Shown here in pieces: positions 26,598 to 64,000 of a stretch of 64,000 bases of DNA. Under the pieces are notes generated by a model, which did not search any database, was not told the origin of the DNA, and saw only the letters and a list, made by a program, of their open reading frames with translations. A program made the position numbers and the translations under genes. Source of the stretch: Mustelus asterias (taxonomy: Eukaryota); the NCBI RefSeq assembly GCF_964213995.1, contig NC_135830.1, forward strand, positions 14,322,001-14,386,000. The letters are read 5' to 3'. Position 1 is the first letter of the stretch; the number at the start of each line of letters is the position of its first letter.

Positions 26598-26754
26598 GTA
26601 AGTTACTCCAACCCCGCCGTGTTACAAAATGTATCGTGTAACGCTCACCGTCATTTTATTATCGTGATCTGTATCGTTTCAGTCCAATTGATACGGATAA
26701 GGATCTGTTTACAGATCCGTTACAGATTTTGATTTGGGGGCAGGACGTGATTTG

Positions 26755-28270: not shown

Positions 28271-28576
28271 ATTCTAGTTCCCTGGTGTCGAAAAATCCGC
28301 CTCTCCAAACCTCTGCTGCTGGTGACACGGTTGCTTTAAGCTGTGAATATTCAGGGTTCTGTCAGTACACAGTACACTGGTACAGTCAGTCCGCAGGGCA
28401 GGCTCTGAAATACCTGCTTCAGACACACACTTCAGGAGAGGAGAATAAAGAAAATGCTGCCGGGGGGAGAATTTCTGCTTCTATCGATTCTGCCGAGAAA
28501 ATCAGCTGGTTAAAGATCTCCAAACTGGAACTGAGCGATTCCGCTGTGTATTACTGTGCACTGAGTCGGAGCACAG
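28271..28576 (+). CDS. Leaderless supporting TCR-delta V of the NAR-TCR cassette
   Basis: Acceptor at 28270 is in phase with the NAR J donor. DSSSLVSKNPPLQTSAAGDTVALSCEYSGFCQYTVHWYSQ...DSAVYYCALSRS has an extra CDR1 Cys. No leader exon found between J and this V. Confidence 0.92.
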
Positions 28577-28737
28577 CACAGTGATACAGAACATGGAGAG
28601 AGCTGTACAAAAACCTGGACATGGTGCGTATTACAGACACAGTGATACAGAACACAGAAAGAGCTGTACAAAAAAATGAACATGGTGAAAATCACAGACA
28701 TAGTGATACAGAACACAGAGAGAGCTGTACAAAAACC
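28577..28737 (+). repeat. Three tandem 61-bp copies of a 23-RSS
   Basis: CACAGTG-23-ACAAAAACC (28577-28615), CACAGTG-23-ACAAAAAAA (28638-28676) and CATAGTG-23-ACAAAAACC (28699-28737). Confidence 0.95.
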
Positions 28738-35210: not shown

Positions 35211-37639
35211 AAAGAGAAACAAAACAAAGAAGATAGGAGTATTCTTAATACATCAGTTAGCTGGACTAATTGAGCAAGATAAAGAAAAGATTAGAGAGTT
35301 AGAATCCAGAAGAAGGGAACAAGAGAAACAAAACCACGTATTAGAAGACAAGCAATGGAGAGGGGAAAGTGCTCCTCTACCTCCTAATGAGTCCATACAA
35401 CAGGGACCAACCGCTCCTCCAGAGGAGTAGGAAGTGCTAGAACACAACTTAGTGCCAATACCCCGAAGGGGAACAGATGCGCAGCCAAAAGCAAATTATA
35501 AACCCTTCACCCAGTTTAAAACAGAGACTCAGAGGGAATGCTCCCACTTACTGGAGCAGAATTACCACAACAAAACAGTTAAGAGGGGGGAAGAATGCAC
35601 GCAGAAGAGGGATCAATGTATGTGATAATGAGGGAAACCCTAAGACTTGGGAAATGTTGAAATGGGAATGTGAGAAGAATGAGAAGGACAAAAGAGATAG
35701 AGCAGAACAGGAAAGACTGCAAAGGAAAGATAAAAACCCGGAAGTATCTGGCTTGCCAATGTTGTTGCAAACTACCGATACAGATGAACAGGAGGGGGAT
35801 TGGTGGAATCGACCCAGTGTAGATAATTACCAGAAATCTAAGGTAGCCGTCATTGCCCCGATTATAATAACGCGCCAGTGCCGCTGCAAAGACAGAAGGG
35901 ACTCAAATCAGGTAAACTTGGTTCGCTTGAAGCATGATCGAACAAAGAGGGGAGTAAAGGGTCAAAAGGAAACAAGCTGTACGATTCTGTATGGTACAGA
36001 GTGAGACAGAGAGGATGTAATTGTGCAATCGAGAGCCTCATGTGATGGAATAGTGTATAGCAGATCAAAGTGAATTGCTTCTCTGTGTGCGAGTTTAATA
36101 AATTATTTTCGGGGAAGTGTTAAAACTGTGAGAGATTAAAGTGATAAGATTTCTTGAATTTACTTCTGTTTTGAATTTAATTACAGTTTGGAAGACAGAA
36201 GAATAAAAGCGAATGTTAATCAACGTTCTGTATTGTCAAGTGTTTTCCTTTCATCGCAGTTTAAGATGTTAAGTTTGAATGAATGTTGGAAGCTTCCATG
36301 TGTATCCATATTTAACAAAGTGGATGTTTTGTTGTTGTTTGCTTTAATGTTTTAATGTTAAGGAAGGAGTTAAACCTTGGAAGGACCATGTGCTCTTTCC
36401 TTTGACTTGAAGTTGAAATTATAAAAGAGTTAGTTGAGAGAAGAAAATAAGTAAATTTGTGGAGAAGTAGAAAAGCAGGAACAAAAGAATGAGGTGAATA
36501 TATTGTCTATGCGTCAGTTTAAAGTATATCAAGTTAGTGAAATGAATCGTAATTCTGATTACTCCAAGTTCCAGCGGGAGATTAATTGATTAAAACCTCA
36601 GTTGTCAATGCAGATAAAGATGTTGTCATTGAATATGTTTAATCTGCATTTGTTGCCAACCATTGAACACCATGATCTGTTGGAACTTGAGTTGCCAGTT
36701 AGTTCTAAATAACATTTGGACCAATATGAAATGCAAGGCTTGTATGATGTTGTTTCGTTAACATGCAACAAATTACATCATCTGACATTGACGATAGTTC
36801 TGGCTAGCCCATCCAGAGGAAAACCTGACTACAGTACTAACTTCTGGAGACCAATACCAATACAAATTGCCCAGTAAGAATACAGTATTAAGATCCACAG
36901 AATAAAGTGATTTACGAACGTCTGATAGTTTAGTATTCTGCAACTGGTTAAAATTATAAACTGCCTTTAGAATTTCATGTGCCTTCTATTATTCAAGGTT
37001 TCCCAAATATAAAAACACTGCAGAGCTTAAAGACTAGCCAGTTAAAAATCAAACCAAAACATTTCTAATCAATTAACTATTGTTATTGTTATATGTATTG
37101 TGCCTGTTATTTTTCTAAAAATGCAGGGATTTTAATCTGGAACTCAGTTTAAAAATAGACAAGACATAAATTAAAAGGGTTTGGATATCACAGTTATGAT
37201 ATATAAAGTGGCATGATATAACTGCCGCTCGATTATTATACAGTATAAGCACTGCCATGTAGACCCGAGAATAAAATCAAATCCTGAAAGGCCTTAACCA
37301 GTTTTATGGTATATATTGTGTATTGATAAAACATAATTCTGTAGGAGAAAAGGCGATTTATTCCAAGCTAAATGTTTGTGTTTTAGTGGTACTTTGTGAA
37401 GTACTATAATGCTTATGCGCAACGAAATTATCAAAATAAATCTAATGAAAGTATACATCACATAAAACTCAGAGCTGTATGGCATGTGATTTTAATGGAG
37501 AAAGCGATGTCTTTTGATAGGATTATATACAAATGAATGGATGTCCAGCTGCAGCCAGTGCAAAGTGTAATTTGATTCAAACTGAGCTTTCTATGGAAGG
37601 GGGACATGTAATTAAATGTATAATGCACGAGCTAAAGCC

Positions 37640-38043
37640 ATACAGACATTGGGAAAAATGTGGACAAATGTATTGCCCACCATACTAACCACAAACGGGA
37701 TAACCGGATTAACCCCTTATGAACTAATGACAGGACGGGTGATGCAATTACCAGAAAACATCGTAACAGGTGGGACTGATGTTGGTCCGCTCAAAGATAA
37801 AATCAGGAGATATGATTTGGAACTAAGCACCCAACTAAAAGGAATGTGCAAATTGGTAAAAGACAATCAGGAAATAAGAGACGCAGAGAGAGATCTTGAA
37901 ATGCTCCCTGACGTCCCAACAGTGCGACGTCCTAGTGAAAACATTACCTGACAAACCAGGGTTTGCACCAAAATGGAATGGGCGATATGAAGTTATAATT
38001 AGTGGAGTCACCTGTGCCTCATAGACATAAGAGGGAAAGGTAT
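37640..38043 (+). pseudogene. pol: ERV integrase C-terminal remnant
   Basis: WTNVLPTIL...TGLTPYELMTGR and GFAPKWNGRYEV (GPY/F-like). It resumes as WKH after the nested LINE at ~41090. Confidence 0.8.
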
Positions 38044-41000
38044 ATAAGAACATAATAAATAGGAGCAGGAGTAGGCCATCTAGCCCCTCGAACCTGCCCC
38101 CCCATTCAACAAGATCATAGCTGATCTGAAGCGAATCAGTTTCACTTACCCGCCTGCTCCCCATATCCCTTAATTCCCTTATCGATCAGAAATCTATCTA
38201 CCCGTGATTTAAACTTATTCAACGAGGTAGCCTCCACCACTTCAGTGGGCAGAGAATTCCAGAGATTCACTATCCTCTGAGAGAAGAAGTTCCCCCTCAA
38301 CTCTGTTCGGAACCGACCCCCACTTATTTTGAGGCTGTGCCCTCTCGTTCTGGATTCCCTTCCAAGTGGAAAGAATGTCTCTACCTCTACCCTATCCAGC
38401 CCCTTCATTATCTTATAGGTCTCTATAAGATCACCCCTCAGCCTTCTAAACTCCAACGAGTACAGACCCAATCTGTTCAATCTCTCCTCATAAGCTACAC
38501 CCCTCATCTCCGGTATCAACCTGGTGAACCTTTTCTGCACTCCCTCCAAGGCCAATCTATCCTTTCCCAAATAAGGGGACCAAAACTGCACACATTACGC
38601 CAGTTGCGGCCTCACCAGTGCCTTGTATAGTGGCAGCAAGACCTCCCTGCTTTTATATTCTATCCCCCTCGCGATAAAGGCCAACATTCCATTCGCCTTC
38701 TTGATCACCTGCTGCACCTGCAGACTGAGTTTTTGCGATTCGTGCACAAGGACCCCCAGGTCCCTCTGCACAGTAGCATGATGTAATTTTTCTCCATTTA
38801 AATAATATTCCAATTTACTATTATTTCTTCCAAAGTGGATAACCTCACATTTGCCAACGTTATATTCCATCTGCCAGATCCTCGCCCACTCGCTCAGCCT
38901 ATCCAACTCTCTCTGCAGACTTACCGCTTTCCCATTCATCTTCGTGTCATCAGCAAACTTTGATACCCTACACTCAGTCCCCTCCTCCAGATCATCTATG
39001 TAAATGGTAAACATTTGAGGCCCCAGCACCGATCCCTGCGGCACGCCACTCGTCACCAACTGCCAACCAGAAAAGCACCCACTTATTCCAACTCTCTGCT
39101 TCCTGTTAGATAGCCAATCCCCAATCCAAGCCAACACATTACCCCCAACTCCGTGTACCCCAATCTTCTGCAGCAACCTTTTGTGAGGCACCTTATCGAA
39201 TGCCTTCTGGAAATCAAAAAACACCACATCCACTGGTTCCCCTCTGTCAACCGCACGAGTCACATCTACATAAAAATCCAGTAAATTCGTCAAACACGAC
39301 TTTCCCTTCATGAATCCATGCTGCGTCTGCTTGATTGAACCATTCTTATCCAGGTGCTCTGCTATTTCCTCTTTAATGATGGACTCCAGCATCTTCCCAA
39401 CTACGGACGTCGAGCTAACCGGCCTGTAGTTACCCGCCTTTTGTCTACTTCCTTTTTTTAAACGGCGGCATAACAGTAGCTGTTTTCCGATCAGCCGGCA
39501 CTACCCCAGAGTCCAGCGAATTTTGATAAATAACTACTAACGCATCTGCTATTACCTCAGCCATTTCTTTCAGTACCCTGGGATGCATTCCATCCGGGCC
39601 TGGTGACTTGTCTACCTTCAGTCCCATTAGTCTACCAAGCACTACCTCTTTAGTAGCAGTAATCGTATTAAGGACCTCAACTCCCACCATTAAGGACCTC
39701 ACCTCCCTCTCGATCTCTAATATTCGGTAAACTATTTGTGTCTTACACCGTGAAGACCGACACAAAGAACTTATTTAAAGTCTCAGCCGTTTCCTCGTTT
39801 TCCATTATTAAATCCCCTCTCTCGTCCTCCAAGGTTCCAACATTCACTCTAGCCACTCTATTCCTTTTTGTATATTTGTAAAAACTTTTACTGTCATTTT
39901 TTATATTTTGAGCTAGTTTAGTTTCATAATCTATCTTTCCTTTCTTCATCGCTTTCTTAGTCGTTCTTTGTTGTTTTTTTTAAAGTTTTCCCAATCCACT
40001 AATTTGTTTTCATTTTAATACTCTCCTTTATTTCCTTCGTTATCCATGTCTAGTTATCCCTTTTCTTACAGTCCTTCTTTATCACCGGAATATATTTTTG
40101 CTGAGTACTTAAAAAAATCTCCTTAAAAATCCTCCACTGTTCCTCAGCTGTCCTACCTACCAGTCTGCTCGCCCAGTCTACATTAGCCAATTCCGCCCTC
40201 ATCTTATCGTACTCCCCTCTGTTCAAGCAGAGGACACTGGTTTGGGACCCTACTTTCTCACCCTCCATCTGTATCAGAAATTCAACCATATTATGATCAC
40301 TCAACCCAAGAGGATCCCTCGCCAGAAGATCCTTAATTCTACCTGTCTCATTACACAGTACCATGCCTAAGATAACTCGCTCTCTCGTAGGTTCTGTAAC
40401 ATGCTGTTCAATGAAACTATCCCGACAGCATTCTAAGAACTCTTCCTCAAGCACTCCATGTCCAATTTGAGTCGACCAATCAATATGCAGGTTCAAATCC
40501 CCCATGATTATTGCCATTCCGTTTTTGCACGCATCCATTATTTGCTTGTTTGTAGCCCTTCCCACCTCTAAGTTATTATTTGGGGGCCAATAGACCACGC
40601 CTACCAGTGTCTTTTCCCCTCTACTCTTCCTTATCTCCACCCACAACGATTCCACGTTTTGCTCCTTAGAGCCTATGTCGTCTCTCACTACCGTCCTGGT
40701 ATTATCCTTTATTAAAGAGCTACCCCACCTCCTTTTTCTACCTCTCTATCCTTCCTAAATGTCTGATACCCGTGGATATTCAGTTCCCAGTCCCGGTCAC
40801 CATGCAACCACGTTTCTGTGATGGCCACTAGATCATAGTCATTTGTATGGATTTGTGCCATCAAGTCATTTACTTTGTTTCGAATGCTTCGTGCATTCAG
40901 GCAAAGTGTCTTTATGCCAGTCTTTATCTGGACCCGGTTGGTTGAAACGCTACTAACATCTCCCGAGCCCTCTACTCCTTTAACTCGTTGAATGTCCTCA

Positions 41001-41088
41001 ACATTAACCTGCACTTGTACTCTCTCCTTTACCTTCGATTTTGTAATTCCCCTTACCCCTACACCCTCCCCCCGATTTAATAGTTTAA
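38044..41088 (-). mobile_element. CR1 LINE (ORF2 endonuclease + RT) nested in the ERV integrase
   Basis: Minus-strand ORFs [42 protein letters not shown] and KFADDTK, with a few frameshifts and stops. Confidence 0.93.
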
Positions 41089-41255
41089 ATATGGAAACAT
41101 TAAACTCTGCTGAAAGAATATGCTGAAACTAATTGGGAAAATATGTGATATACTCCCATTGCAGGAATGTACAGACAACGACTGACCTCCAAGCAAGCTG
41201 AACGGGTTCGCGGGAAGTTGTATAACGGTCGCGCGGGTTATTAGTAAGAGATAAG

Positions 41256-42678
41256 ATGCTTTTCACGCTGCTTCTCACGACCCTGGCCCTGTCAACCATC
41301 GCGGGAAAGTATAGATGGAATTATGAGGATTTAGGGGTAAAGCACAGTGATCATCTCTGTAATGATGACTCTGTCTATTGTATGAACACCTTTGTGTATA
41401 TGTCTTATCTGTATGCATCACAATCGAATCTGAGCAAGTGCTGGGTCTGTTCACACATTCCCATGCACGGAAGAAAGGGAGGAATTCCTTTATTCCCTAT
41501 CCCTTTATCAGCTCTGGAAATAAAGAATGTATTTTAAATCAGAATGGAACCCAGGAATGGAAAAGGAAACTACATTTAAAACCCCATCGGGTACCACCAT
41601 GCAGGACACGTTTAATATCAGCAACAGTGATGTTGTTTTCGGGCTAGGGGGCGGAGGGTGCACTTTATCGACCTTTAAGAAATATTACCAACCCAGCTAC
41701 GACAGATCAGGATCTCCACCCTACTTCGTTGTGAAAAATCAACAAAGGGGATCTACCTGCCTGACAAGAAATGGAACGATACCTGCTGGCCGTCGCTACT
41801 GTATACAAGAGACTGATATCACGAATGACACTTGGGCCATGGTACAGGTCACAATCCAGTGCCCCACAGCCACCGTCCCGGTTAGTCTCTCCTCCGCTTA
41901 TGTGAGCAGGATGACTGCATATAATGGTACCTATTTTGTCTGTGGAACCAATGCCTATCCATGGCTTCCCTGGAATTGGGCAGGATCATGCTACTTGGCA
42001 TATGTGGTGCCTCATATTCACCATTACACTGACTTACGGGACCACCCCGAGATACACCTGCTTAGGGCTAAGCGAGCCATTAGTGAGACAGAACGGTTCT
42101 TCATGATAGCCTACCCACTTTATGGGACAGAAAAGGCTGCACAGGAACTGATACGGATGGCCTCGACCCCAGAGAGAATTGCAAATGAGACTAAAGATGG
42201 GTTCGAGGAGGTGAGCACGGCCATCTCTGAAATATCAGCAGAGGTCGTAGCTATTCGGACTGTGGCGTTACAGAACCGATTGGCACTCGATTATGTGCTC
42301 GCCTCCCAAGGAGGAACATGTGCTATAGTTGGCTCCGAATGCTGTACGTATGTTCCCGATGCTTCGGAGAATATAACTCGCTTGGCAGATCACATTAAAC
42401 ATGTGGCGAAAACAATGCAGGATGAGGGGAACCAATATCACAATTATAACCCTCCGGGATGGCTGGGGCAATGGTTTGGGTCGTGGTGTGCATAGCTGAT
42501 GCATGGATTGATTGTATTAATTGTAATTGTAATTACCTGCTATGTTTGTATGGCATTGTTGAACACCTGTTGCAAAATAGGAACAGCGCGGATTATGCCG
42601 GGCACAAGTGTACAGGCAGAGGGGGCAGACCACCTGACAAAGGAGGTAGGCCCATTCGCTGATAACATATGGTTCTGA
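41256..42678 (+). pseudogene. env: ERV env, gamma-type, disrupted
   Basis: Signal peptide, CWVC motif, RAKR furin site, and ISD plus CX6CC (LQNRLALDYVLASQGGTCAIVGSECC). Frameshift(s) near 41520-41600 and a TAG at 42493 just before the membrane anchor. Confidence 0.9.
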
Positions 42679-49402: not shown

Positions 49403-49707
49403 GCGTCCAGTCGGATGTGGTGTTGACCCAGCCAGAGGCAGAAACGGGGGTAGTAGGGCAATCCCTGACCCTAACCTGTAAAACCAGCGGATTTGATATT
49501 GGGAGCTTCATCATGCTCTGGTACCGGCACAGTCCTGAGACGGGACTGGGATGGCTGCTTTGGTACAATAATGAAAATAGCAAGGATTACAATCAGGAGC
49601 TTGGTGGACGATTCATTGCATCCAAGGACCTTTCCAACAACGTATTCGATCTCTCTGTCAGCACGTTAACAATAGCAGACAGCGCGACGTATTACTGTGC
49701 ACAGCAG
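49403..49707 (+). CDS. IgH(M)-like V segment in a TCR locus (TAILV-like)
   Basis: DVVLTQPEAETGVVGQSLTLTCKTSGFDIGSFIMLWYRH...GRFIASKDLSNNVF...DSATYYCAQQ; shark VH framework motifs and an open frame. Confidence 0.9.
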
Positions 49708-49746
49708 CACACTGATATAGATCACATCCAGACTTGTACAAAAACC
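49708..49746 (+). other. 23-RSS
   Basis: CACACTG-23-ACAAAAACC. Confidence 0.92.
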
Positions 49747-52610: not shown

Positions 52611-53724
52611 GACTCGTGTCGAGAATAATGAACACCTTGAATATATTCCATTCTCAACGAAAGTCATCACTCAGGAAACATCCAACACCCATCCATGTCT
52701 CACCCTTCAGAGCAAAGCTATGTAAGAATAACATCCTGCAATTATGTGTGGAGTCTTGAGAAACTGAGCTGACACAGAATATTCGCCATCCAAATTCGTA
52801 TTTATATGGAATACCCAAGGAGAGATAATTGCATTGGCAGGAAGGCAGGTGTCAAAATCACGCAGATTTAAATGATTTGCACTCGTTTCTGGTTGTTCAG
52901 GAGCCAAATAGTTAGAGTGGGGGAGCCGGTTCGTTAGTGATTTTCAAAGGGGAGTACGTTCAGTATTTACAATGTCAACATTGTAAATATTATGTGTTAA
53001 TTGCAGGGAGGTGGAAACATGTCGAAAAGGGGTTGAGTGATGGAATCTTCCATCCTGGTAGAACAGAAGGTTTATAGGAAGAACATCACTTAGGACTTCA
53101 TCTCCATTTCTGATCTCATCCTGACCTAACAACATGTGTCCGCTCATTGATGGTTGTGGGTTTTCAATACTGGGATATGGGCAGTTGATAGCCCACTGGT
53201 ATTGACACTAGATTAGCGACTCAAGGACCCAGGTTACTAAGTCGGGCGGGTACCCAAGTTCAAATCCGAACAAGGCAGATGATGAAATTTGAAGTAAATA
53301 AAAAAACCATTGAGACCATTGTCGATTGTTGTCAAAACCCATCTTGTTTACTAATGCCCTTTTAGGGAAGGAAATGTGCCTAAATGTGACTCCAGAAACA
53401 CAGCAATATGGTTGACTCTTAAAGGTTTCTGGTCAATGGTTGCCCCCAGGATTTTCCAGCTATGAAAGAAGCATTTCGATGACCACCTGACACGCATTAT
53501 ATACAAGGTTATGGACCAAGAGCTGGAAGATGTGATTGGAATGGTTACATGTTTGATGGCTAGCACAGACAAGATGGGCCGAAGGTCTGTAGAAGTTTAT
53601 GACTCTTTGACTAACTCGACAGCTCCCCTTTCAAATCAGCCACGGGACATTAAACGCCCAACAGACAAGGCAGATTATTTGATACCTCATCTAAACATTG
53701 ATGAGTGATATTGCAGAACTTCCT

Positions 53725-53915
53725 CAACACAAACAGAAAATGCTAGAAAATCTCACAGCTCTGACAGCATCTGTGGGGAGCGAATAGTGCACACGTTTCG
53801 AGTCTAGATGACCTTTCGCTAGCTCTGACGAAGGGTTCTCTAGGCTCGAAGCAAAAACAGAAAATTCTGGAAAATCCCAGCATCTGTGGAGAGAAAATTG
53901 AGTCAAGGTTTTGAG
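53725..53915. mobile_element. Penelope-like terminal repeats in inverted arrangement
   Basis: TTTCGAGTCTAGATGACCTTTCG facing CTGACGAAGGGTTCTCTAGGCTCGAA. Confidence 0.55.
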
Positions 53916-54775
53916 GCTGGATAACAGAACCAAGCTTACCTGATCTGACTCCAGATGCACAGCAATGGCTTGCCATCTGGAATGATCTAACAATTGTCCG
54001 GTTTCTCCTACAGTCCGAAAGACGTGCTGGTTAGGTGCCTTGACCATGCTAAATTGTCCCTCAGTGTACCCGAACAGGTGCCAGAGTGTGGCGACGGGGG
54101 GATTGTCACAGTAACTTCACTGCAGTGTTAATGTAAGCCCAGCTGTTGCACTAATTAATAAACTTTAAACAATCCATTCAATTCAGGGCAATTAGGGATG
54201 TGAGCGAAGTCCTCACCCCTTGAGATGATAAATAAAACCAAAACCGATTCACCTACTTCTCATCAAATCCTTCGATGGATGCCCTTCTCAACGTCTCTGG
54301 AATCGTCTCCAACCTGTGTTCTTTTTCAATCTGTTGTTTCTATAGTTTTTGCCTTTTGAAAGTGCCCCTAATTCTTTTCGCCCCTCAATCCGCAACTGTG
54401 CCTTCAATTGCCTTCTTCCTGAGCTGGGGAATTCTCGAGGTTAATTCCTCACCTTCCCGCCTGCCCGCCCCCCCTCCCCCAATCCCCCCTCCCTCATCCC
54501 CGCCCACTTTTCCACCTCAGCTTCCTTACCTCCGTTCTTTTAACAATTTTCCTGAAAAATTACCCCAACCGCAGAACATCCTGCTGGTTATCTAACCCCT
54601 ACAGGTGTGCTGTGCCAAATATTTTTAGCCAGTGCTCATGTGAAATCACATGGACGGTTTTAATCGGGTGCGTTGCTTCATGGGAGTGGAATTGATAGTT
54701 GCATCAATCAGCGACATTCTGCTGTCGCAGCTGAGATGATACATGCGACAGCAGTAGCAGCAACAGCTGCTGAAG

Positions 54776-54842
54776 AGTTTTTGTGCTGGCATGTATCACT
54801 GTGCACAGCGTTAGATTAAAGGTAAAACCCCGTACAAAAACC
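54776..54842. other. Precise 12-RSS/23-RSS signal joint (or zero-length D)
   Basis: AGTTTTTGT-12-CACTGTG|CACAGCG-23-ACAAAAACC with no intervening bases; the junction creates GTGCAC (ApaLI). Confidence 0.93.
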
Positions 54843-54997
54843 TCAGCGAGTATTTACAGCTCCATTAAGTTTCCTCCTGCGCGAATGGTTTGACCCGGCT
54901 TCAAGAAGACAGTCATTTCTAATTAGGGTAGAGCCGACGGGATGATTGGATATCACCTGAAGACTCTGTCAGCAATAAGCCAATAAGCAGATGGTGT

Positions 54998-55506
54998 TGT
55001 GGTGAACCATCGTTGGTTCCCACTAGGTAGTACTGAGCCAGGGTCTGGCCAGTACGACGAGTCTGTATATATGTTGCTGTTGGGATTAGGGATGGGTTGT
55101 TCTATTTGTTACTGTTGGGGTTAGGGTTGGGCTGTTACACCTGTATTATAGTTATTATGGTACATCCCAGTCGGGCTCCACCTCCTGGGAGAGGTATAAA
55201 GGTCACTGCTCTGCTTGGGACCCCTCAGTCTGGGATCGTGTACTATATATGGTAGCTTCGTTGTAATAGTAAATAAAAGCCTTTATTTCCTTGAGCATAT
55301 CAAGCCTCGTGAGTGATAACGCGCATCAATTTTATTTACTATTAATTAAACTCTCGTCGTTAAACAAAAAGGAAAATGATACAGAGAGTATGGAACAAGT
55401 AGAACAACCCATCCCTAACCCCAACAGCAACATATATACAGACTCGTAGTACTGTCCAGACCCTGGCTCAGTACTACCTAGTGGGAACCAACGATGGTTC
55501 ACCACA
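54998..55506. mobile_element. LTR-derived element with 113-bp terminal inverted repeats
   Basis: TG...CA termini and 5-bp TSD GGTGT. 54998-55110 is the reverse complement of 55394-55506 with about 4 mismatches. The left 330 bp resembles a full LTR (TATAAA, AATAAA, ends GCATCA). Confidence 0.85.
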
Positions 55507-55666
55507 GGTGTTATCTAATATTCTCTTAATTCTCGATCCAGTGATCTCAGCTCTTCCTCCCATTGATTCTGTAGGATGTGACATCCACTGCTCTCAGCTT
55601 TATCTCGTTCGATATTCTGCAACTTTCGGAGACACAAGTCCCGGGAATCCAGGAGCAGCAGCAGCG

Positions 55667-55712
55667 ATGCGGTGCTCCCTTCTCGCTGTTTTCTGGGTGA
55701 CATTCATTGTCG
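55667..55712 (+). CDS. Leader exon (MRCSLLAVFWVTFIV) of a truncated TCR V
   Basis: Hydrophobic, with phase-1 G|GTAAG donor. Confidence 0.78.
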
Positions 55713-56454
55713 GTAAGAAGTTTGAAACTTGAAAAAGAGTAAAAGGGAGTTTAATTTATGGAGGAATAAGTTTGAAAAGCAGGACTTTCGTGTTAAACAA
55801 GTATTAGACCTGCCTTAGAGCACAAATGAATCTTTGTTTGTGGCTTTGGTCTTTTGGAGGACAGATTCTAAAAGCGCACAGCAAAGGCGATTTAAAGAGA
55901 TGGTACCAGGATTGGAAGATGAGAGCTATCAGAAAGCATTATAAAAATTATGATTGCTCTCTCTCTGGACGAGAAGACAATCAGGTAATCTGACTGATTT
56001 CTGGACAATGATGATCAAATCAATTTAAATAATAATAAATCAAATCAAAGAGATTTAGTGTGCTGGACGGGTAGAGGATGATTCCATTTGGGGAGTATTA
56101 CATATCTGTGTCCCATAAATCTAAGTGAAACAAAAAGATCAACTGGGAATTACAGAGAAATTTTTTTTGAAAGAGTTCTGTAGAAGTGACTCACACTGAC
56201 ACAATGAACTGTTGAGGAGAGGATTAACGATGCATTGGAGGGCAAACTAGAGAAACCGCTGAGGTAGAAAGGGATAGAGGTATTTGAGATGAGGCAGGAG
56301 GGAGGATTCTCCGAGGGATTGTGAAAGGGGACAGAGATCAGTTGGAGTGAATGTGTTAGAATTTAATACCTTCTTTTATGTTGCACTGATTTTTCACCCT
56401 CGCTTCAAGTGAACTTTTAATCAATGACTTTTGTTTGTTAACCTTGTGTTCTCG

Positions 56455-56588
56455 ATCTGAACGATGGAGATTCTGTTACTCAGCTGGAATCCTCACTCAC
56501 ACAGACAGAGGGAGAAGATGTCACTTTAATCTGCACCTATACCGACGATGCTTATTATTTATTCTGGTATTGTCAATACCCAGGCAGA
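56455..56588 (+). pseudogene. TCR alpha/delta-type V pseudogene truncated by CR1
   Basis: [44 protein letters not shown], then LINE sequence. The expected acceptor reads CTCG (no AG); the 3' half and RSS are absent. Confidence 0.85.
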
Positions 56589-57670
56589 CATCCCTCCAAA
56601 CTATCCACAACACCATCAACTTTCGTGTCGTCGGCAAACTTACCAACCCATCCCTCCACTTCCTCATCCAGTCATTTATGAAAATGACAAACATCAAGGG
56701 TCCCAGAACAGATCCCTGGGGCACTCCACTGGTGACCGACCTCCATTCAGAAAAAGTCCCATCTACAACCACTCTCTGCCTTCTGCAGGCAAGCCAGATC
56801 TGAATCCACAAGGCAACAGCCCCTTGGATCCCATGCCCTCTCACTTTCTCGAGAAGTCTTGCATGGGGGACCTTATCGAATGCCTTGCTGAAGTCCATGT
56901 AAACCACATCTACCGCTTTTCCTTCGTCAATGTGTTCAGTCACATTTTCAAAGAACTCCACCAGGCTCGTAGGACACGATTTGCCTTTGACAAAGCCGTG
57001 CTGACTACTTTTGAGCATACTAAACTTCTCAAAATGTTCAGAAATCCTGTCACTCAGGATTTTCTCCATCAACTTACCAACCACTGAGGTTAGACTCACC
57101 GGTCGGTAATTTCCTGGGCTATCCCTATTCCCTTTCTTCAATATAGGAACCACATCCGCAATCTTCCAATCCTCCAGAACCTCTCCCGTCTCCATTGATG
57201 ATGCAAAGATCATCGCCAGAGGCTCTGCAATCTCTTCCCTCGCCTCCCATAGTAACCCGGGGTACATCCCACCCGGTCCCAGCAACTTATCTATCTTGAT
57301 GCTATTCAAAATTTCCAACACACCCTCTTTCTTAATGTCCTCATACTCAATCTTTTCAGTCCACCTCAATCCTGTAGTACAACCACCCAGGTCTTTTTCC
57401 ACCGTGAATACCGAGGTAAAATATTCATTAAGCACCTCTGCTATTTCTTCCAGTTCTGTACAGACTTTCTCACCTTCACATTTTATAGGTTCTATTCCTT
57501 CACATCTCATCCTTTTACTCTTCACGTATTTATAGAACGCCTCAGGCATCTCCTTAATCTTACCTGCCAAGGCCTTCTCGTGACCCCTTCTTGCTCTCCT
57601 AATTTCTTTCTTAAGTCCCTTCCTACAAGCCGTATACTCATCTAGATCCCTATCATCGCCTCGCTCTCTT
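56589..57670 (-). mobile_element. CR1 LINE ORF2 fragment
   Basis: ORF 56521-57795(-): [24 protein letters not shown] and [11 protein letters not shown]. Confidence 0.92.
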
Positions 57671-58445
57671 TTATGAACTCTCTGAATATTCACTTTCGAA
57701 TGAGGAGATGCATAATAAGTAAATGTATTGATGTTAAATGTTGAATAATGAAACAAATACCTAGTAAAATAGATTGAGAATGATGCATTTACCACAGTGG
57801 TTCATTTTCAGTTTTTGTTTCAGATTCCAGCATCCACAGTTTTTTGCTTTTATTTATTCGCTCTGACCTGGGCCTCAAAATTCATTCAGGGCGATCTGAA
57901 ATACTGGATTTTCATGAGAAGAAAAAGAGGAGCATGTTCTCCAGGAGCACCTGGAGAACGTGCAGACTCCGCCCAGACAGCCACCCAAGCCGAGAAACAA
58001 ACCTGAGTCCCTGGTGCTATAATGGTTGTCCACAGGGAGAATGTGGACAGCCATTAGCAGTCTTTTCCCCTGGTTTCTGTGGCTATGGCTCATCTTTCAT
58101 TCCCTCACCCTGCAGTATAAATATCTCCCAATTCTTTTTGCTTTGATAAAGGGTCATCTGGACTCAATATTGCAAATATCGCTGACATTAAGTGATGTCC
58201 ATCTTTGTGCGGGGCAAACGTGCTCCATTTGGACAGAAGGTGAAGGGCCGGAACAGATGTGCCCCTAAAAAAGATGACGACGATGTGGGGGCGGGGCTTT
58301 GGGCGGTGCACGCAGAACGCAGAGGCGGTTGGGCTTGCACATGCGCATTGCAGCGGGAGTGTTTTGTTGACGGAAGCGCGCGGCTTCTTCTCTTGATCTG
58401 AATCAGATTTGAAAGGGGGGACGGTTAACGGTCGGCGGCGTTGTC

Positions 58446-58525
58446 ATGGCTGCAGGGGCGGGGCTTGTCAACCGGGCGCGCTGGCACAAGTGGACCCTCG
58501 AGCTTAACCTGAGTGGCAGCAGCAG
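58446..58525 (+). CDS. EMC4: EMC4 exon 1
   Basis: MAAGAGLVNRARWHKWTLELNLSGSSR in a CpG-rich region, with phase-2 donor. Confidence 0.88.
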
Positions 58526-59176
58526 GTGCGGAGGCCGCGCGGGGTGCCGGGGGCTCGAGTAGGAGGCAAGCCGGGTCAGCCCGTCTCTCCCGAGGGGAGG
58601 CCACCGCACACTGACCCGGGGATGTGGCACCAACCCAAAACTTCCCAACCCCGGGTTTTTCACGCCTCTTTTACCCCTCACCGAGCTCCTCATCACAAAG
58701 CAGCCCCTCAAATCCTCCAGAAACCACTCAGACCCCACTTGGCATCTTTTCCCCAGGTCATGACCCTGAGATGCCCTTTTGGTTTCAGCCCCTCCACCTG
58801 ATCAGGTGCCAACTGCGGTGGTGGTTGGAGGAACGATTGCTGGTTTCCAGGGCCCGGTGCTGAACTGGATCTCTCTCAATGTCCCGCAGTGTTTGTTTTC
58901 AAGATACAATTTGGTACATCTGGTGATTTGTCACTTTGTCCCGAAATGGAGGGCAACTGGATTGGCACCCTGATTATCAATTGGCACTAATCCACTTCTG
59001 CCACCCTCCATTCCCGTGGCAGTTCAGTGGACACAACGGCAGTGTGTGTCCGAGGTTTGCCCAAGCTTTAGTTCATGTTGGCACTATTGTCACCATGTTG
59101 GGTCCTCAACAGAGAGACTCCCTCTTTAAAGAAGGTCTTGAAAGGGTGACCAATTTATGTTTTCTGTTTCTCACAG

Positions 59177-59288
59177 GAGCCGTGATCAACAGTGTGGCCA
59201 GAGAGACTCCATGTACCCAGTCGCATATTCGGACAAACAGCTACCGGACATCTGCGTCCAAGAAACAGACCGGATCCTGGTTGAGAAA
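59177..59288 (+). CDS. EMC4: EMC4 exon 2
   Basis: [37 protein letters not shown]; AG/GT flanks and consistent phases. Confidence 0.95.
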
Positions 59289-59494
59289 GTAAGTTGGATT
59301 TGAATGTGTCTTTAGTGTGTGGCTGACAACGCCCCTGGTTTGTCCACGGTGGTGAAGTACCTTGGTGAACCACAGCAGCCTGTGTGATAAAGGGTTAATC
59401 ATCATGCTTACTTCAAGGCCTGGATATAAGATCAGCATATGGCCTCCCCTAACCGGCCCCCTTTACTGATACCCTGCTCACTTTCTGTTTTCAG

Positions 59495-59648
59495 CGCTGC
59501 TGGGACATCGCCTTGGGCCCATTGAAACAGCTGCCCATGAATCTGTTCATCATGTACATGGCTGGCAACACCATCTCCATCCTCCCTATCATGATGGTGT
59601 GCATGATGGCCTGGAGACCCATACAGGCCTTGATGTCCATGTCTGCAA
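59495..59648 (+). CDS. EMC4: EMC4 exon 3
   Basis: [51 protein letters not shown]. Confidence 0.97.
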
Positions 59649-59729
59649 GTGAGTATTGTATCGAATCTGCAGCTCAGAAACAGCTCTGAACCGGCATCAC
59701 TTGACTGTAGCTTAGAATAGAGTTCTGGG

Positions 59730-60730
59730 AGTTGGGTAATTAAGGGAGTTAGAGAAGAAAGGGAAAGGGGTGCTGTTTTGCTTTCTAACTTTCTCAGCCG
59801 TCAGGAAGTGATCTTACTCTTCTACAGGAGAAGAAGCTAGATTTTTGGTGAGGATCTGCTAAGTGACTACGGTTTATTCTATTATTAAGGATTAAAATAG
59901 TACAGCAACTGGTGGTAAGGTTAATAAAATACTTAAAAACTAAAATACTTGAAAACAAAAATAAAATATGTAATTAGGTAAAATAATTAAACAGTTTATT
60001 CGCACACATTAAAGATGTGTCACAGCTGCAGCATGTGGGAGCTCCTGGCTGTCAGTTTGATCCAGGGCAACCATGTCTGCAGTCAGTGAAGTTCGAGCAG
60101 CTCTGGTTCAGAGTTTATGAGCTGGAGGCTGAACTACAGACACTGCAATGCATCAGGGAGGGGGAAAGTTACCTGGATTCTTTGTATCAGGGAGCAGTCA
60201 CACCTCTTGGCCCAGGGTCTGCTGATTTGGTCAGTGGTCAGGAACAGGAAAGTGAGGCAAACTTGTCCAGCCAGTTTGAGGTATTTTCAGCTTGTTTGGA
60301 TGAATGGGAGCTGCAGGATGGATGAGCCAATTACCCATGGCACTGTGGTACAGGAAGCCATTCTAGTGAGGGGAGCAAAAAGGATTGCAGTGATAATGGG
60401 GGACAGTATAGTCAGAGGGATTGGCACATTCTCTGCAGTAAAGAATGTGAATCCAGGCGGCTGTGGTGCCTGTCTGGGGCCAGTGTTCAGGACATCTGAT
60501 CAGGGCTGGAGAAGAAATTTCAGTGGGGAGGGGAAGGTTCCAGTTGTCCTCATCAATGTAGGTATAAACAACAGAGATAAAGAAGGAGGTTTTCAGTGTC
60601 GATATGAGGACCTAAGCACTAAATTAAGAAGCAGAACCTCAATGGTTATAATCTCTGAATTATTACCTGAGCCACATGCTAATAGGTATAGGACAGATCA
60701 GATCGGAGGGATGAATGCGTGACTGAAAGG
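59730..60730 (+). mobile_element. CR1 LINE 5' UTR/ORF1 remnant in EMC4 intron 3
   Basis: Coiled-coil RVYELEAELQTL and esterase-like VIMGDSIVRGI. Confidence 0.75.
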
Positions 60731-60759
60731 CTGCGTTAAAGTTTATTTATTAGTATCAC

Positions 60760-61335
60760 AAGTAGGCTTACGTTAACACTGCAATGAAGTTACTGTGAGA
60801 ATCCCCGAGTCGCCACACTCCAGTACATGTTCGGGTACAATGAGGGAGAATTTAGCGTGGCCAGTGCACCTAACTAGCACGTCTTTCAGACTGGGAGAAA
60901 ACCGGAGCACCCGGAGAAAACCCACACAGATACAGGGTGAACGTGCAAACTCTGCACAGATAGTGACCCAAGGGGTGGCACAGTGGTTAGCACTGCTGCC
61001 TCACAGCGGCAGGGACCCAGGTTCGATTCCAGACTCGAGTGACCGTGTGTGTGGAGTATTCATGTTCTCTGTCTATCTCCGGGTCCTCCGGTTTCCTTCC
61101 ACAGTTCAAAGATGTGCGGGTTAAATTGATTGGCTATGGTTCGTTGTCCCATAGTGTCAGGGGGACTAACAGAGTAAATACATTGTGTTACAGGGATAGG
61201 GCCTGGGTGGGATTATGGTCGGTGCAGAAGCGATGGGCTGAATGGACTCCTTCAGAATTGTAGGGATTCTAAGCCAGTATAGAACCGAGTCCCTGGTGTT
61301 GTGCGGCAGCAGTACTAACCACTGTGCCGCCCTAA
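60760..61335. mobile_element. Nested HE1-type SINEs (plus-strand copy ~60973-61270 inside a minus-strand copy)
   Basis: V-SINE cores on both strands. Confidence 0.75.
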
Positions 61336-61784
61336 CTGGTGTGGGAGGTGGGTTCTGGTTCATGGGACACTGACATCAGTACTGGGTAAAGTGGGATCTG
61401 TACCATTGGGACAGTCTACATCTGAACTGTGCTGGGGCCGGTGTTCTTGCGAACCCCATGATGAGGAAAATAGAGACGGTTTCAAACTAAATAGTGGAAA
61501 AGGAATCAAATTTGAGGCAAGGAATGAAATTTATATGAATGACTGGATGAAGGGATGTTTGGCAAATTTGCCGATGACACACAGATAGATGGGAAAGTAG
61601 GTTGTGAAGAGGACATACAGAGAGTACAGAAAGATAGAAAGGTTAAGTGAGTGGGGAAATATCTGGCAAATGGAGTAGAATGTGGGCAAATGTGAGATTG
61701 TCCATTTCGGCAGGAAGAATGAAAAATAAGCATTTTGTCTAAATTTTGAGAGATTGCAGAGCTCAGAGATTCAGAGGGATAGAG

Positions 61785-62625
61785 TCATAGAGGTTTACAG
61801 CATGAAAACAGGCCCTTCGGCCCAACTTGTCCATGCCGCCCTTTCTTTTTTAAAACCCCGAACCTAATCCCAATTGCCCGCATTTGGCCCATATCCCTCT
61901 AAACCCATCGTACCCATGTAACTATCTAAATGCTTTTTAAAAGACAAAATTGTACCTGCCTCTGCTACTACCTCTGGCAGCTTGTTCCAGACACTCACCA
62001 CCCTCTGTGTGAAAAAACTGCCCCTCTGGACACTTTTGTATCTCTCCCCTCTCACCTTAAACCTATGCCCTCTAGTTTTAGACTCCCCTACCTTTGGGAA
62101 AAGATATTGACTATCTAGTTGATCTGTGCCCCCTCATTTTATAGACCTCTAGAAGATCATACCTCAGCCTCCTACGCTCCAGAGAAAAACGTCCCAGTCT
62201 ATCCAGCCTCTCCTTATAACTCAATCCATCAAGTCCCGGTAGCATCCTGGTAAATCTTTTCTGCACTCTTTCTAGTTTAATAATATCCTTTCTATAATAG
62301 GAACTGCACACAGTATTGCAAGTGCGGCCTTACCAATGTCTTGTAAAACTTCAACAAGACATTCCAACTCCTGTATTCAATATTCTGACCAATGAAACCA
62401 AGCATGCTGAATGCCTTCTTCACCACTCTGTCCACCTGTGACTCCACTTTCAAGGAGCTATGAACATGTGCCCCTAGATCTCTTTGTTCTGTAACTCTCC
62501 CCAACGCCCTACCATTAACTGAGTAAGTCCTGCCTTGGTTCAATCTACCAAAATGCATCACCTCGCATTTGTCTAAATTAAACTTCATCTGCTATTCGTC
62601 AGCCCACTGGCCCAATTGATCAAGA
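61785..62625 (-). mobile_element. CR1 LINE 3' portion
   Basis: MKFNLDKCEVMHFGR and LERVQKRFTRMLPGL. Confidence 0.9.
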
Positions 62626-62819
62626 TCTGGGTGTCTGAGTGCATAAATCACAAAAGGCTAATATGCAGGTACAGCAAGTAATTAGGAAAACTAATAGAAT
62701 GTTATCATTCATTGTGATGGAAATTAAATACAGAACTAGGGAGGTTATGCTTCAGTTGTACAGGTCACTAGTGAGACCACATCTGGAGTACTGTGTGCAG
62801 TATTGGTCAGCTTATTTAA

Positions 62820-63166
62820 TCATAGAAATCATAGAAACCCTACAGTGCAGAAGGAGGCCATTCGGCCTATCGAGTCTGCACCAACCATAATCCCACCCAG
62901 GCCCTACCCCCACATATTTACCCGCTAATCCCTCTAACCTACACATCTCAGGACTCTAAGGGGCAATTTTCTTTTTAACCTGGCCAATCAACCTAACCCG
63001 CACATCTTTGGACTGTGGGAGGAAACCGGAGCACCCGGAGGAAACCCACGCAGACACGAGGAGAATGTGCAAACTCCACACAGACAGTGACCCAAGCCAG
63101 GAATTGAACCCAGGTCCCTGGAGCTGTGAAGCAGCAGTGCTAACCACTGTGCTACCGTGCCGCCCC
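62820..63166 (-). mobile_element. HE1-type SINE within a plus-strand CR1 fragment
   Basis: Near-identical to 27333-27675 in reverse. Confidence 0.9.
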
Positions 63167-63333
63167 TTGTGTTAAGGAAGTGTTCAAGTATGCTGGATAT
63201 CAAGTATGTTCAAGTATGCTGGAGACAGTTCAGAGACGGTTTACCAGACTAATACCTAAAATGGATGGGCTGTGTTATGAGGGAAGGCTCTCACATGTTC
63301 CTGAACTTCCTGCTTTTCCATTCTCGCTCTCAG

Positions 63334-63494
63334 TCTTTAGGGTCCTGGGGAATTCGAATCAGCACTGGCTGCAGCGTCTCATCTACTTCATCGGCAACCT
63401 GCTGGGGTTGGCCCTGGCCATCTACAAGTGCCAGGCAATGGGGCTGCTGCCCACACATGCCTCTGACTGGCTGGCATTCATCCAGCCACCCCAG
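63334..63494 (+). CDS. EMC4: EMC4 exon 4 (last exon beyond window)
   Basis: [53 protein letters not shown] with phase-0 donor. Confidence 0.96.
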
Positions 63495-63844
63495 GTGAGA
63501 TCCGCACTCTGTATGTGAGGGGGAGCCAGGAAAATAGGAAGAGGAAACCATTCAGGGCTGTGGAGCCTGAGAGGTTGAGTAGATTGGGCCCAATTCTTTT
63601 TATTCATTCGTGGGACATGGGCATCACTGGCTGGTCAGCATTTATTGTCCATCCCTGGTTGCTCTTGAAGGGCAGTTGAGAGTCAACCACAGGAAATCTG
63701 CCGCCCTTACCTGGTCTGGCCTGCATGTGACTCCAGAGCCACAGCAACGTGGTTGACTCTCAACAGCCCTTGGGCAACTAGGGATGGACAATAAATGCTG
63801 GCCAGTCAGAGACGCCCATATCCCACGAATGAACAAAAACAAAT

Positions 63845-64000
63845 GAGGGATGGGGGAAGAGTGCAGGGAAAGTGGGGATGTCTTTGGGAATTGAGAGATA
63901 GGAGGAAGAGTGTGGGGAAAGTGGTGATATCTTTGGGAATTGAGGGATGGGGGAAGACTGGGTAAAGTGGAGATATCTTTGGGAATTGAAGAATGAGGAG
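63845..64000. repeat. ~48-bp purine-rich minisatellite
   Basis: Three copies ending GAT(G/A)TCTTTGGGAATTGA. Confidence 0.75.

What the first reader, a model, noticed from the sequence alone, without database searches (positions are those of the whole stretch)
54776..54842. Precise V(D)J signal joint apparently fixed in the genome
Seen: a near-consensus 12-RSS (AGTTTTTGT-12-CACTGTG) is fused heptamer-to-heptamer, with zero intervening bases, to a 23-RSS (CACAGCG-23-ACAAAAACC). The junction creates GTGCAC. Established: this is the exact product of RAG signal-end joining (the ApaLI site is the standard diagnostic). Cartilaginous fish carry germline-joined Ig genes, and signal joints can be re-cut by RAG. 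Inference: this is a fossil of germline RAG activity in a TCR locus, by inversion, D excision or re-integration of an excision circle. The right spacer ends GT-ACAAAAACC like the V RSSs at 28577 and 49708, which hints at a V origin. Alternatively it works as a zero-length 12/23 D: upstream 23-RSS V segments could join to it, making it a relay or deleting element.
Basis: partly seen in the sequence, partly recalled or inferred. Interest (0 to 1): 0.92.

Follow-up and report, generated by a model that had tools for sequence, protein, structure and literature searches.

The report
Inherited RAG signal joint in shark TCR locus
Two recombination signals of the kind that guide antigen-receptor gene assembly sit fused head to head with nothing between them in a shark T-cell-receptor locus, which is most simply read as an inherited scar of the recombinase having once cut and rejoined this DNA in the germ line.

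Summary
At 54776-54842 a 12-spacer RSS (AGTTTTTGT-12-CACTGTG) abuts a 23-spacer RSS (CACAGCG-23-ACAAAAACC) with no base between the heptamers. It has 2 mismatches to the 32 consensus positions, and 0 of 100 shuffles gave a match.

The window is a shark TCR alpha/delta V region. It holds a NAR-TcR V-D-J cassette, its supporting V and a VH-like V upstream. The leader of another V lies 0.8 kb downstream, or about 0.3 kb without a recent transposon.

My best reading (about 0.7) is a germ-line RAG signal joint kept on the chromosome. The most likely route is a deletion between a 12-RSS and a downstream 23-RSS whose coding sides faced each other. That reaction is documented somatically at TRB and TRD D-D pairs.

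- No coding-joint partner, inverted V or J lies in the window.
- The flanks show no provenance.
- Public contigs from two samples of the species and from two differently labelled organisms cover the site at several times the flank depth. This suggests a small family of copies, and other first-stage notes report similar joints elsewhere in this genome. No bridging read was shown.

Function as a zero-length D or relay is untested. I found no printed report of a germ-line signal joint in sharks.

The parts
54776..54803 (-). 12-spacer RSS. Read heptamer-first on the minus strand it is CACAGTG-ATACATGCCAGC-ACAAAAACT. On the plus strand the order is nonamer 54776-54784, spacer 54785-54796, heptamer 54797-54803. 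Its coding side points right.
   Evidence: 0 heptamer and 1 nonamer mismatch, spacer exactly 12.
54804..54842 (+). 23-spacer RSS: heptamer CACAGCG 54804-54810, spacer 54811-54833, nonamer ACAAAAACC 54834-54842. Its coding side points left.
   Evidence: 1 heptamer mismatch (position 6) and 0 nonamer mismatches, spacer exactly 23.
54803..54804 (.). The junction: heptamer joined to heptamer with zero intervening bases. It lies at the centre of GTGCAC (54801-54806).
   Evidence: The rows shown list no inserted letters at this place (12 of 56 insertion or deletion rows were shown).
49417..49746 (+). Nearest upstream V. This is a VH-like V exon (49417-49707) with its own 23-RSS (49708-49746), about 5 kb upstream of the joint.
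   Evidence: The best PDB sequence matches are antibody heavy-chain V domains.
54999..55506 (.). Recent transposon between the joint and the next V. It has 113-base terminal inverted repeats (96% complementary) and is flanked by the 6-base duplication GGTGTT (54993-54998 and 55507-55512). It is not part of the joint, but it inflates the distance to the next V.
   Evidence: One search shows contigs of X1, X3 and X9 that skip it (empty site).
55667..55712 (+). Leader exon of the next V (MRCSLLAVFWVTFIV, then a GT donor at 55713). It lies 825 bases after the joint, or about 315 bases without the transposon.
   Evidence: read from the sequence.
56470..56600 (+). First half of that V exon ([44 protein letters not shown]). 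V-like sequence stops near 56600, where the LINE reverse-transcriptase ORF on the minus strand begins. The end coordinate is approximate.

Best explanation
This is a genuine V(D)J signal joint carried in inherited DNA.

**Proposed mechanism (inferred)**
- In a germ cell of an ancestor, RAG paired a 12-RSS that preceded a D- or J-type segment with a 23-RSS further downstream that followed a V or D.
- The coding sides of the two signals faced each other. The DNA between them therefore left as the coding product.
- The two blunt signal ends were ligated precisely on the chromosome.
- The exact fusion fits a cell without terminal transferase.

**Later history**
- The product was inherited.
- It was probably copied with short flanks to a few other places.
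- It now sits in the V array about 0.3 kb (before a recent transposon insertion) upstream of a V leader.

**Present state**
- It is most likely inert today.
- Both signals keep the features RAG needs (CAC, the A-tract nonamer, 12 and 23 spacers), so thymocyte RAG could still cut it.

**Shown:** the structure, its statistical improbability and its TCR alpha/delta context.

**Inferred:** RAG as the agent, the germ line as the place, and deletion rather than inversion as the route.
For: **Structure**
- The anatomy is exact and 0 of 100 shuffles matched.
- The pair obeys the 12/23 rule, and spacer lengths are exact on both sides.

**Context**
- A NAR V has VNAR structures as its best PDB hits, E 3e-20.
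- It has its own D flanked by two 12-RSSs, and a J with a 22-spacer RSS.
- The supporting V has a 23-RSS, and a VH-like V is present.
- So 12-RSSs exist inside this V array as possible partners.

**Precedent for the reaction**
- The same reaction is documented in thymocytes. The 5' 12-RSS of TRB D1 joins the 3' 23-RSS of D2 to give an intrachromosomal RSS junction.
- The commonest form of that junction (about 25%) has no added bases. The same is seen at TRD.
- Source: bioRxiv 10.1101/2023.04.21.537904, abstract and section 7 read.

**Route**
- No inverted V or J lies in the window. This favours deletion over a local inversion.

**Reads**
- Contigs of two samples of organism A and of organisms B and C cover the bin 54764-54860.
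- Summed depths there are 562, 130, 190 and 69.
- Single contigs beside it have depths of about 56-85, 5-12, 19-58 and 4-6.
- Among the rows shown, no inserted letters appear at the junction.
- The only listed change inside the joint is a 1-base loss at 54824.

**Prior knowledge**
- Germ-line RAG activity in cartilaginous fish is established through germ-line-joined genes and hybrid-joint inversions (PMC2193153, passages read).
Against: - No reciprocal product was found.
- No flank homology shows where either RSS came from. All 18 flank comparisons fell inside the shuffle range, the best at z 3.6 with a score below the null maximum.
- The read evidence is contigs only. No listed contig bridges 54803/54804.
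- Only 40 of 405 substitution rows and 12 of 56 insertion or deletion rows were shown.
- Tissues and the independence of samples are unknown, and the best holder may be the assembled sample itself.
- Near-consensus RSSs in what looks like a multi-copy element could instead mean selection for a function.
- The left half overlaps in sequence with the Tyr-Tyr-Cys-Ala end of V genes.
Confidence: 0.7

Rival explanations
1. A working zero-length D, relay or deleting element. Whatever its origin, the 12/23 pair would be kept by selection. Upstream V 23-RSSs could join its 12-RSS, and its 23-RSS could join downstream D or J 12-RSSs. That would add a round of untemplated junctional bases, or delete intervening V segments as delta-Rec does in mammals.
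For: - Both RSSs remain near consensus.
- The bin holding the joint has several times the depth of its flanks in all 4 runs laid, including two other organism labels.
- None of the 40 substitution rows shown falls inside 54776-54842, while 4 fall within about 60 bases of it: 54736, 54755, 54876 and 54899.
- Somatic junctions of this kind recombine further with V and J in mammals (abstract).
- First-stage notes list other such joints in this genome (unchecked).
Against: - No rearranged product was looked for or seen.
- The element lies inside the V array with a V leader just downstream and no J within the next 9 kb.
- V 23-RSSs can already join D 12-RSSs directly, so a relay adds little.
- Cutting one signal makes the other the coding end. 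Normal end trimming would then destroy it (inference).
- The depth figures sum all contigs at 80% likeness or more, and most difference rows were not shown.
Confidence: 0.13
2. The 3' end of a decayed V gene followed by its own 23-RSS. On this view CACTGTG is the heptamer embedded in the Tyr-Cys-Ala codons, and the left 'nonamer' is a chance match.
For: - GTATCACTGTGCACAGC matches the end of the VH-like V (GTATTACTGTGCACAGC) at 16 of 17 bases.
- It also aligns with the end of the supporting V.
- In the Cys frame the stretch reads LLKSFCAGMYHCAQR.
Against: - Any signal joint contains CACTGTGCAC. That is one base from TACTGTGCAC, so most of the match is built in.
- The GTAT before it is the usual start of an RSS spacer, seen also in the 23-RSS at 28577.
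- No V-set similarity lies upstream of 54785. Four V queries by tblastn at E up to 10 gave nothing in 54100-54800.
- Local DNA alignments upstream are at null level.
- All three frames carry stops.
- An 8-of-9 nonamer at exactly 12 bases has a chance of about 1 in 10,000 (my arithmetic).
- The V coding end would have to stop one base after the Cys codon.
Confidence: 0.05
3. An ordinary D segment whose coding bases were lost through a small deletion unrelated to RAG.
For: The layout (12-RSS on the 5' side, 23-RSS on the 3' side) is that of TCR-type D segments.
Against: - The loss would have to remove every coding base and touch neither heptamer.
- The heptamers are inverted, not direct, repeats, so they offer no microhomology for such a deletion (inference).
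- The site is not between the V array and a J cluster in this window.
Confidence: 0.05
4. An assembly or somatic artefact. Either a lymphocyte-derived rearrangement or a collapsed D was taken into the reference.
For: - Only contigs could be laid.
- The best holder may be the sample that was assembled.
- No bridging record was listed.
Against: - The site is covered in two samples of organism A and in runs labelled as two other organisms. No insertion at the junction appears among the rows shown.
- A polyclonal somatic event would not reach consensus (inference).
- Other notes report similar joints on other pieces of the genome (unchecked).
Confidence: 0.05

Closest known systems
Somatic intrachromosomal RSS junctions at TRB D1-D2 and TRD D2-D3 ('short' D-D rearrangements; bioRxiv 10.1101/2023.04.21.537904, abstract and section 7 read)
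   Same: - The product is the same: a 5' 12-RSS of one segment fused to the 3' 23-RSS of a later one, kept on the chromosome.
- It often has no added bases.
- It obeys the 12/23 rule.
   Different: - Those arise in thymocytes and are not inherited.
- They lie in the D-J region.
- Here the joint is in the assembled genome, inside the V array, and its parent segments are unknown.
Germ-line-joined Ig genes and hybrid-joint inversions of cartilaginous fish (PMC2193153, passages read)
   Same: These are inherited footprints of site-specific RAG action in germ cells of sharks.
   Different: - Those are coding joints or exchanged RSSs.
- That commentary proposed signal joints with junctional insertions as the source of new D segments. 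It stated that only the other two classes had support from sharks.
- This would be the third class, and with zero insertion.
Signal joints on excision circles (TRECs)
   Same: Precise heptamer-to-heptamer fusion of a 12-RSS and a 23-RSS, and the ApaLI site.
   Different: - Those are extrachromosomal and are diluted out.
- RAG-mediated re-insertion, as I recall it from the literature, opens the joint rather than preserving it.
Isolated deleting elements (delta-Rec / psi-J-alpha, kappa deleting element); named from recall, no call
   Same: RSS without a usable coding segment inside an antigen-receptor locus, able in principle to delete what lies between it and a partner.
   Different: - Those are single RSSs with known partners and known products.
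- Here there are two fused RSSs, and no product is known.

Membership tests
V(D)J signal joint | Two RSS heptamers fused head to head with no, or very few, bases between | tested here: met
   CACTGTG|CACAGCG with zero bases between.
V(D)J signal joint | One 12-spacer and one 23-spacer RSS, each with the CAC of the heptamer and an A-rich nonamer | tested here: met
   spacers are exactly 12 and 23, with 1 mismatch in each RSS.
V(D)J signal joint | More than chance | tested here: met
   1 match in the window, 0 matches in 100 shuffles.
V(D)J signal joint | Reciprocal coding joint, or identifiable parent segments | tested here: not met
   - No inverted V and no J lie within the window.
- The flanks match nothing beside other RSSs.
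- A deletion would leave no partner, so this does not exclude membership.
V(D)J signal joint | Made by RAG | not testable with these tools
   Inferred from the structure only.
Germ-line (inherited) RAG footprint | Present in non-lymphoid DNA of several individuals | tested here: inconclusive
   contigs of 2 samples of organism A and of organisms B and C cover the bin. Tissues are unknown, and no bridging record is listed.
TCR-type D gene segment | 5' 12-RSS and 3' 23-RSS with coding sides facing inward | tested here: met
TCR-type D gene segment | Coding bases between the RSSs | tested here: not met
   zero bases between the RSSs.
TCR-type D gene segment | Lies between the V array and a J-C cluster | tested here: not met
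   A V leader lies 0.8 kb downstream. No J motif with an RSS lies in 54843-64000. The window ends at 64000.
TCR-type D gene segment | Used in rearranged receptors | not tested
   No RNA or thymus DNA run was available; no listed holder is on record as RNA.
V gene 3' end with embedded heptamer | V-set coding body immediately upstream | tested here: not met
RAG/Transib-type transposon insertion | Heptamers at the outer ends of the insert facing outward, with a short target duplication | tested here: not met
   the heptamers face each other at one point.

The most novel reading that the evidence does not exclude
The head-to-head 12/23 pair is a conserved, multi-copy working element of shark TCR alpha/delta loci. 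It would be a D segment of zero length, or proto-D, that RAG still uses as a relay or deleting element. It would be the living intermediate of the old proposal that D segments were born from germ-line signal joints that later gained junctional bases.
Probability: 0.13. Interest if true: 0.88.

Novelty: new variant of a known kind. Interest (0 to 1): 0.62.

Why it matters
Germ-line RAG activity in cartilaginous fish is so far inferred from coding joints (VD-J and VDJ-joined genes) and from exchanged RSSs. The third expected product, a signal joint kept on the chromosome, was proposed in 2000 as the raw material from which D segments arose. That proposal lacked evidence from sharks (PMC2193153, passages read).

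An inherited, exact 12/23 signal joint in a shark TCR locus would be that missing class of footprint. It would also give a concrete object to test:
- whether it is still cut in thymocytes,
- whether it is conserved across elasmobranchs,
- whether copies with a few inserted bases exist.

If it is only a neutral scar, it remains a useful marker of when and where RAG acted in the germ line.

Tried and rejected
**Provenance of the flanks**
- BLAST of the left flank (53800-54803) and the right flank (54804-55000, 55000-55700) against the window found only a SINE-like repeat (53997-54168) and the transposon's own inverted ends.
- I made 18 local alignments of the flanks against the intervals beside every RSS in the window, and against V upstream regions. 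All were within the shuffle range.

**Local inversion**
- tblastn with 4 V queries found no V on the minus strand.
- A J-motif scan on both strands found only the NAR J at 26564.

**V-gene 3' end**
- Rejected for the reasons given under rivals.

**Inverted duplication of one RSS**
- Rejected because the spacers differ in length and are not complementary.
- A 10-base inverted match between 54737-54746 and the 12-spacer (pair I8) sits in a CAG/CTG-rich, hairpin-prone stretch. About one such pair is expected in 1.4 kb, and I did not build on it.

**Relatives from protein databases**
- The search for homologous proteins with the VH-like V gave no candidate, so no orthologous locus could be fetched.

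**Earlier notes**
- A search by sequence was blank.

**Literature**
- Seven full-text searches found no report of a germ-line chromosomal signal joint in a shark Ig or TCR locus.
- The held library lacks most subscription papers.
- The NAR-TcR paper (PMC1458790) and the 2021 Immunogenetics review (PMC7909615) were not held.
- Supplements were not opened.

**Not done**
- I did not search a joined leader-plus-V model; the exons were only read separately.

Full report
**1. The observation**

One search shows, at exactly the reported coordinates, AGTTTTTGT (54776-54784), twelve bases, then CACTGTG (54797-54803). This is followed at once by CACAGCG (54804-54810), twenty-three bases, then ACAAAAACC (54834-54842). 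No base separates the heptamers.

My own scan (heptamer up to 2 mismatches, nonamer up to 2, spacers 11-13 and 22-24) scored the halves as follows:
- Left half: 0 heptamer and 1 nonamer mismatch.
- Right half: 1 heptamer and 0 nonamer mismatches.

The whole consensus pattern, with up to 3 mismatches allowed, matched once in the window, here, with 2 mismatches. It matched in none of 100 shuffles.

The parse is unique. No other CAC lies between the junction and the right nonamer, and no better heptamer lies left of the junction. The two spacers differ in length and are not complementary, so this is not an inverted copy of one RSS.

**2. The surroundings**

Bases 1 to about 24,900 are a TG-rich satellite with a 28-base unit. 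On the minus strand that unit itself looks like heptamer-12-'nonamer': 157 matches at up to 3 mismatches against 5.7 expected.

The V array then follows:
- **NAR-TcR cassette.**
  - A leader lies near 25282.
  - The NAR V exon ends at 25761. Its best matches among solved structures are shark VNAR domains, E 3e-20. It carries a 22-spacer RSS.
  - The D lies at 26153-26168 between two 12-RSSs.
  - The J (DGSGTVVTV) lies behind a 22-spacer RSS.
- **Supporting V** at 28285-28576. Its 23-RSS is repeated three times with a 61-base period.
- **A V-like ORF** at 45445.
- **A partial V** at 48610.
- **A VH-like V** at 49417-49707 with a 23-RSS. Its best PDB matches are antibody heavy-chain V domains.

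The joint lies 5 kb after that V. After the joint:
- A 508-base element with 113-base inverted ends and a 6-base target duplication starts 155 bases later.
- A V leader (55667-55712) follows that element.
- The first half of that leader's V exon (from 56470) runs into LINE-derived sequence.

Without the transposon, the joint would sit about 315 bases upstream of that leader's ATG. The locus is therefore the V region of a shark TCR alpha/delta locus. The joint is intergenic, between two V segments of the same orientation.

**3. Is it in real DNA?**

The look-up of sequencing runs listed 12 runs, 11 of which hold the stretch or a part of it:
- Four runs of organism A, from three samples of one study, hold 0.41-0.55 of the sampled words.
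- Runs of two other organism labels (B and C) hold 0.06-0.08.

All runs are kept as contigs. I laid X1 and X3 (organism A, two samples), X5 (B) and X9 (C) on 53600-56500 at 80% likeness.

| Run | Summed depth in bin 54764-54860 | Depth of single contigs listed beside it |
|---|---|---|
| X1 | 562 | about 56-85 |
| X3 | 130 | about 5-12 |
| X5 | 190 | about 19-58 |
| X9 | 69 | about 4-6 |

Further results:
- At 54824, inside the 23-spacer, the depth of all contigs is 520, 88, 188 and 88.
- A 1-base loss at that place appears in 2, 1, 1 and 0 contigs. That loss would make a 22-spacer.
- Listed flank contigs end at 54785 (X1) and 54803 (X3), and one starts at 54835 (X9). Each is about 30 bases from a flank variant (54755 is listed). 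With 31-letter words this is what copies that share the core and differ outside it would give. This is my inference.
- A 453-base contig of X1 matches the left flank at about 88% identity.
- No row among those shown puts letters in at 54803/54804.

**4. Limits of the read evidence**

- No listed record bridges the junction.
- Only 40 of 405 substitution rows and 12 of 56 insertion or deletion rows were shown.
- Depth sums every contig at 80% likeness or more.
- Tissues are unknown.
- The best holder may be the assembled sample.

So the joint is present in assemblies of more than one sample. It probably exists in several copies in three organism labels. Uniform presence in germ-line DNA is not shown.

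**5. Other joints in this genome**

First-stage notes on other pieces of the same genome, all unchecked, list further head-to-head joints:
- 12/22 and 12/23 joints.
- One 'between an unrearranged V and J'.
- One in 'a conserved block'.
- A NAR-TcR cassette with an inversion that keeps both joints.

This agrees with the multi-copy signal and with the 22-spacer variant. I could not read those places.

**6. How it most likely arose**

A signal joint stays on the chromosome in two cases.

The first is inversion. A local inversion would leave a coding joint at the other end of the inverted piece. No inverted V and no J lie in the 30 kb before or the 9 kb after the joint.

The second is deletion, when the coding sides of the two RSSs face each other so that the coding DNA between them is lost. 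This needs only a 12-RSS that preceded a D or J and a later 23-RSS that followed a V or D. It leaves no partner.
- The reaction is documented in thymocytes. The 5' 12-RSS of TRB D1 joins the 3' 23-RSS of D2.
- Its commonest form, about a quarter, has no added bases.
- TRD D-D pairs behave alike, and the products recombine further (bioRxiv 10.1101/2023.04.21.537904, abstract and section 7).
- In this V array the only 12-RSSs seen are those of the NAR D. Its 5' 12-RSS and the supporting V's 23-RSS are a permitted pair of exactly this geometry.

The flanks of the joint show no similarity to that cassette or to any other RSS flank in the window. The parents therefore remain unknown.

The similarities I did find are too small to use:
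- The 12-spacer shares 7 of 12 bases with the NAR D 5' RSS.
- The 23-spacer shares its last six bases with the NAR J RSS.

Re-insertion of an excision circle by RAG would, as I recall the literature, cut the joint open, so I rank it low. Precise fusion fits a cell without terminal transferase (inference).

**7. Rivals**

- **V-gene 3' end.**
  - The left heptamer and the start of the right one read TAT CAC TGT GCA CAG. That is one base from the end of the VH-like V.
  - Any signal joint contains CACTGTGCAC, and the preceding GTAT is the usual start of an RSS spacer.
  - No V body lies upstream, and all frames have stops.
  - An 8-of-9 nonamer at exactly 12 bases would be a 1-in-10,000 accident.
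- **Non-RAG loss of a D's coding bases.** The loss would have to be exact on both sides.
- **Artefact.** This is unlikely given several samples. It is not excluded, because no raw reads were seen.
- **A working zero-length D or relay.**
  - This is compatible with the same origin.
  - The near-consensus RSSs, the excess depth over the core in three organism labels, and the lack of listed variants inside the core lean that way.
  - The position inside the V array counts against it.
  - So does the fact that cutting one signal exposes the other as a coding end.
  - No rearranged product has been seen.

**8. Comparison with what is known**

Germ-line RAG footprints in cartilaginous fish are known as coding joints and as exchanged RSSs. 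Lewis and Wu (PMC2193153, passages read) proposed that signal joints with junctional insertions could have created D segments. They stated that only the other two classes had support from sharks.

Seven full-text searches found no report of an inherited signal joint in a shark Ig or TCR locus. The library is incomplete, two key papers were not held, and supplements were closed.

I file the finding as a new variant of a known kind. It works like the somatic D-D signal junction and looks like a D of zero length. It fails two defining tests of a D segment: it has no coding bases, and it does not lie between the V array and J.

**9. Verdict**

- The germ-line signal-joint reading is the best supported (about 0.7).
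- The route, the age, the number of copies and any present use are open.
- Interest 0.62. A specialist would find it notable rather than shocking, and it makes an old hypothesis on the origin of D segments directly testable.

Noticed in passing
window 1-24900: A TG-rich satellite with a 28-base unit, with assembly gaps that I left alone. On the minus strand the unit reads like heptamer-12-'nonamer' (CACAGTGATACACACTGACACACACACA). It gave 157 matches at up to 3 mismatches against 5.7 expected. It abuts the NAR-TcR cassette.
   Followed up: partly
window 25282-26598: NAR-TcR V-D-J cassette with an IgH-like RSS layout: V with a 22-spacer RSS, D (26153-26168) with 12-RSSs on both sides, and J with a 22-spacer RSS. 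The D's two 12-RSSs permit inversional joins with the J and with the supporting V's 23-RSS.
   Followed up: partly
window 28577-28737: The 23-RSS behind the supporting V is repeated three times with a 61-base period (0, 2 and 1 mismatches). Another first-stage note (s1-890515) also flags this.
   Followed up: no
window 54993-55512: A 508-base element with 113-base inverted ends (96%) and a 6-base target duplication GGTGTT. Contigs of two samples of organism A and of organism C skip it, so the insertion is recent, polymorphic, or absent from paralogues.
   Followed up: partly
window 56470-57795: A TCR alpha/delta V exon loses its V-like reading near 56600, where a LINE reverse-transcriptase ORF on the minus strand (56521-57795) begins. 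No 3' half or RSS of this V was found downstream.
   Followed up: no
window 34687-42495: Retrovirus-like ORFs on the plus strand, judged by eye only. One is gag-like with a CCHC knuckle (34687-35115) and one is envelope-like with a CX6CC motif (41527-42495). Minus-strand LINE ORFs lie between them (38142-41014).
   Followed up: no
window 55570-55590: GTGACATCC lies about 85 bases before the V leader's ATG. It resembles the CRE-like decamer of TCR V promoters. The motif is recalled from memory, and no call tested it.
   Followed up: no
window 54719-54754: An 11-base perfect inverted repeat with a 14-base loop, in a CAG/CTG-rich stretch just left of the joint. The loop and 3' arm contain a 10-base inverted match to the 12-spacer (54737-54746 against 54789-54798). 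About one such pair is expected by chance in 1.4 kb.
   Followed up: partly
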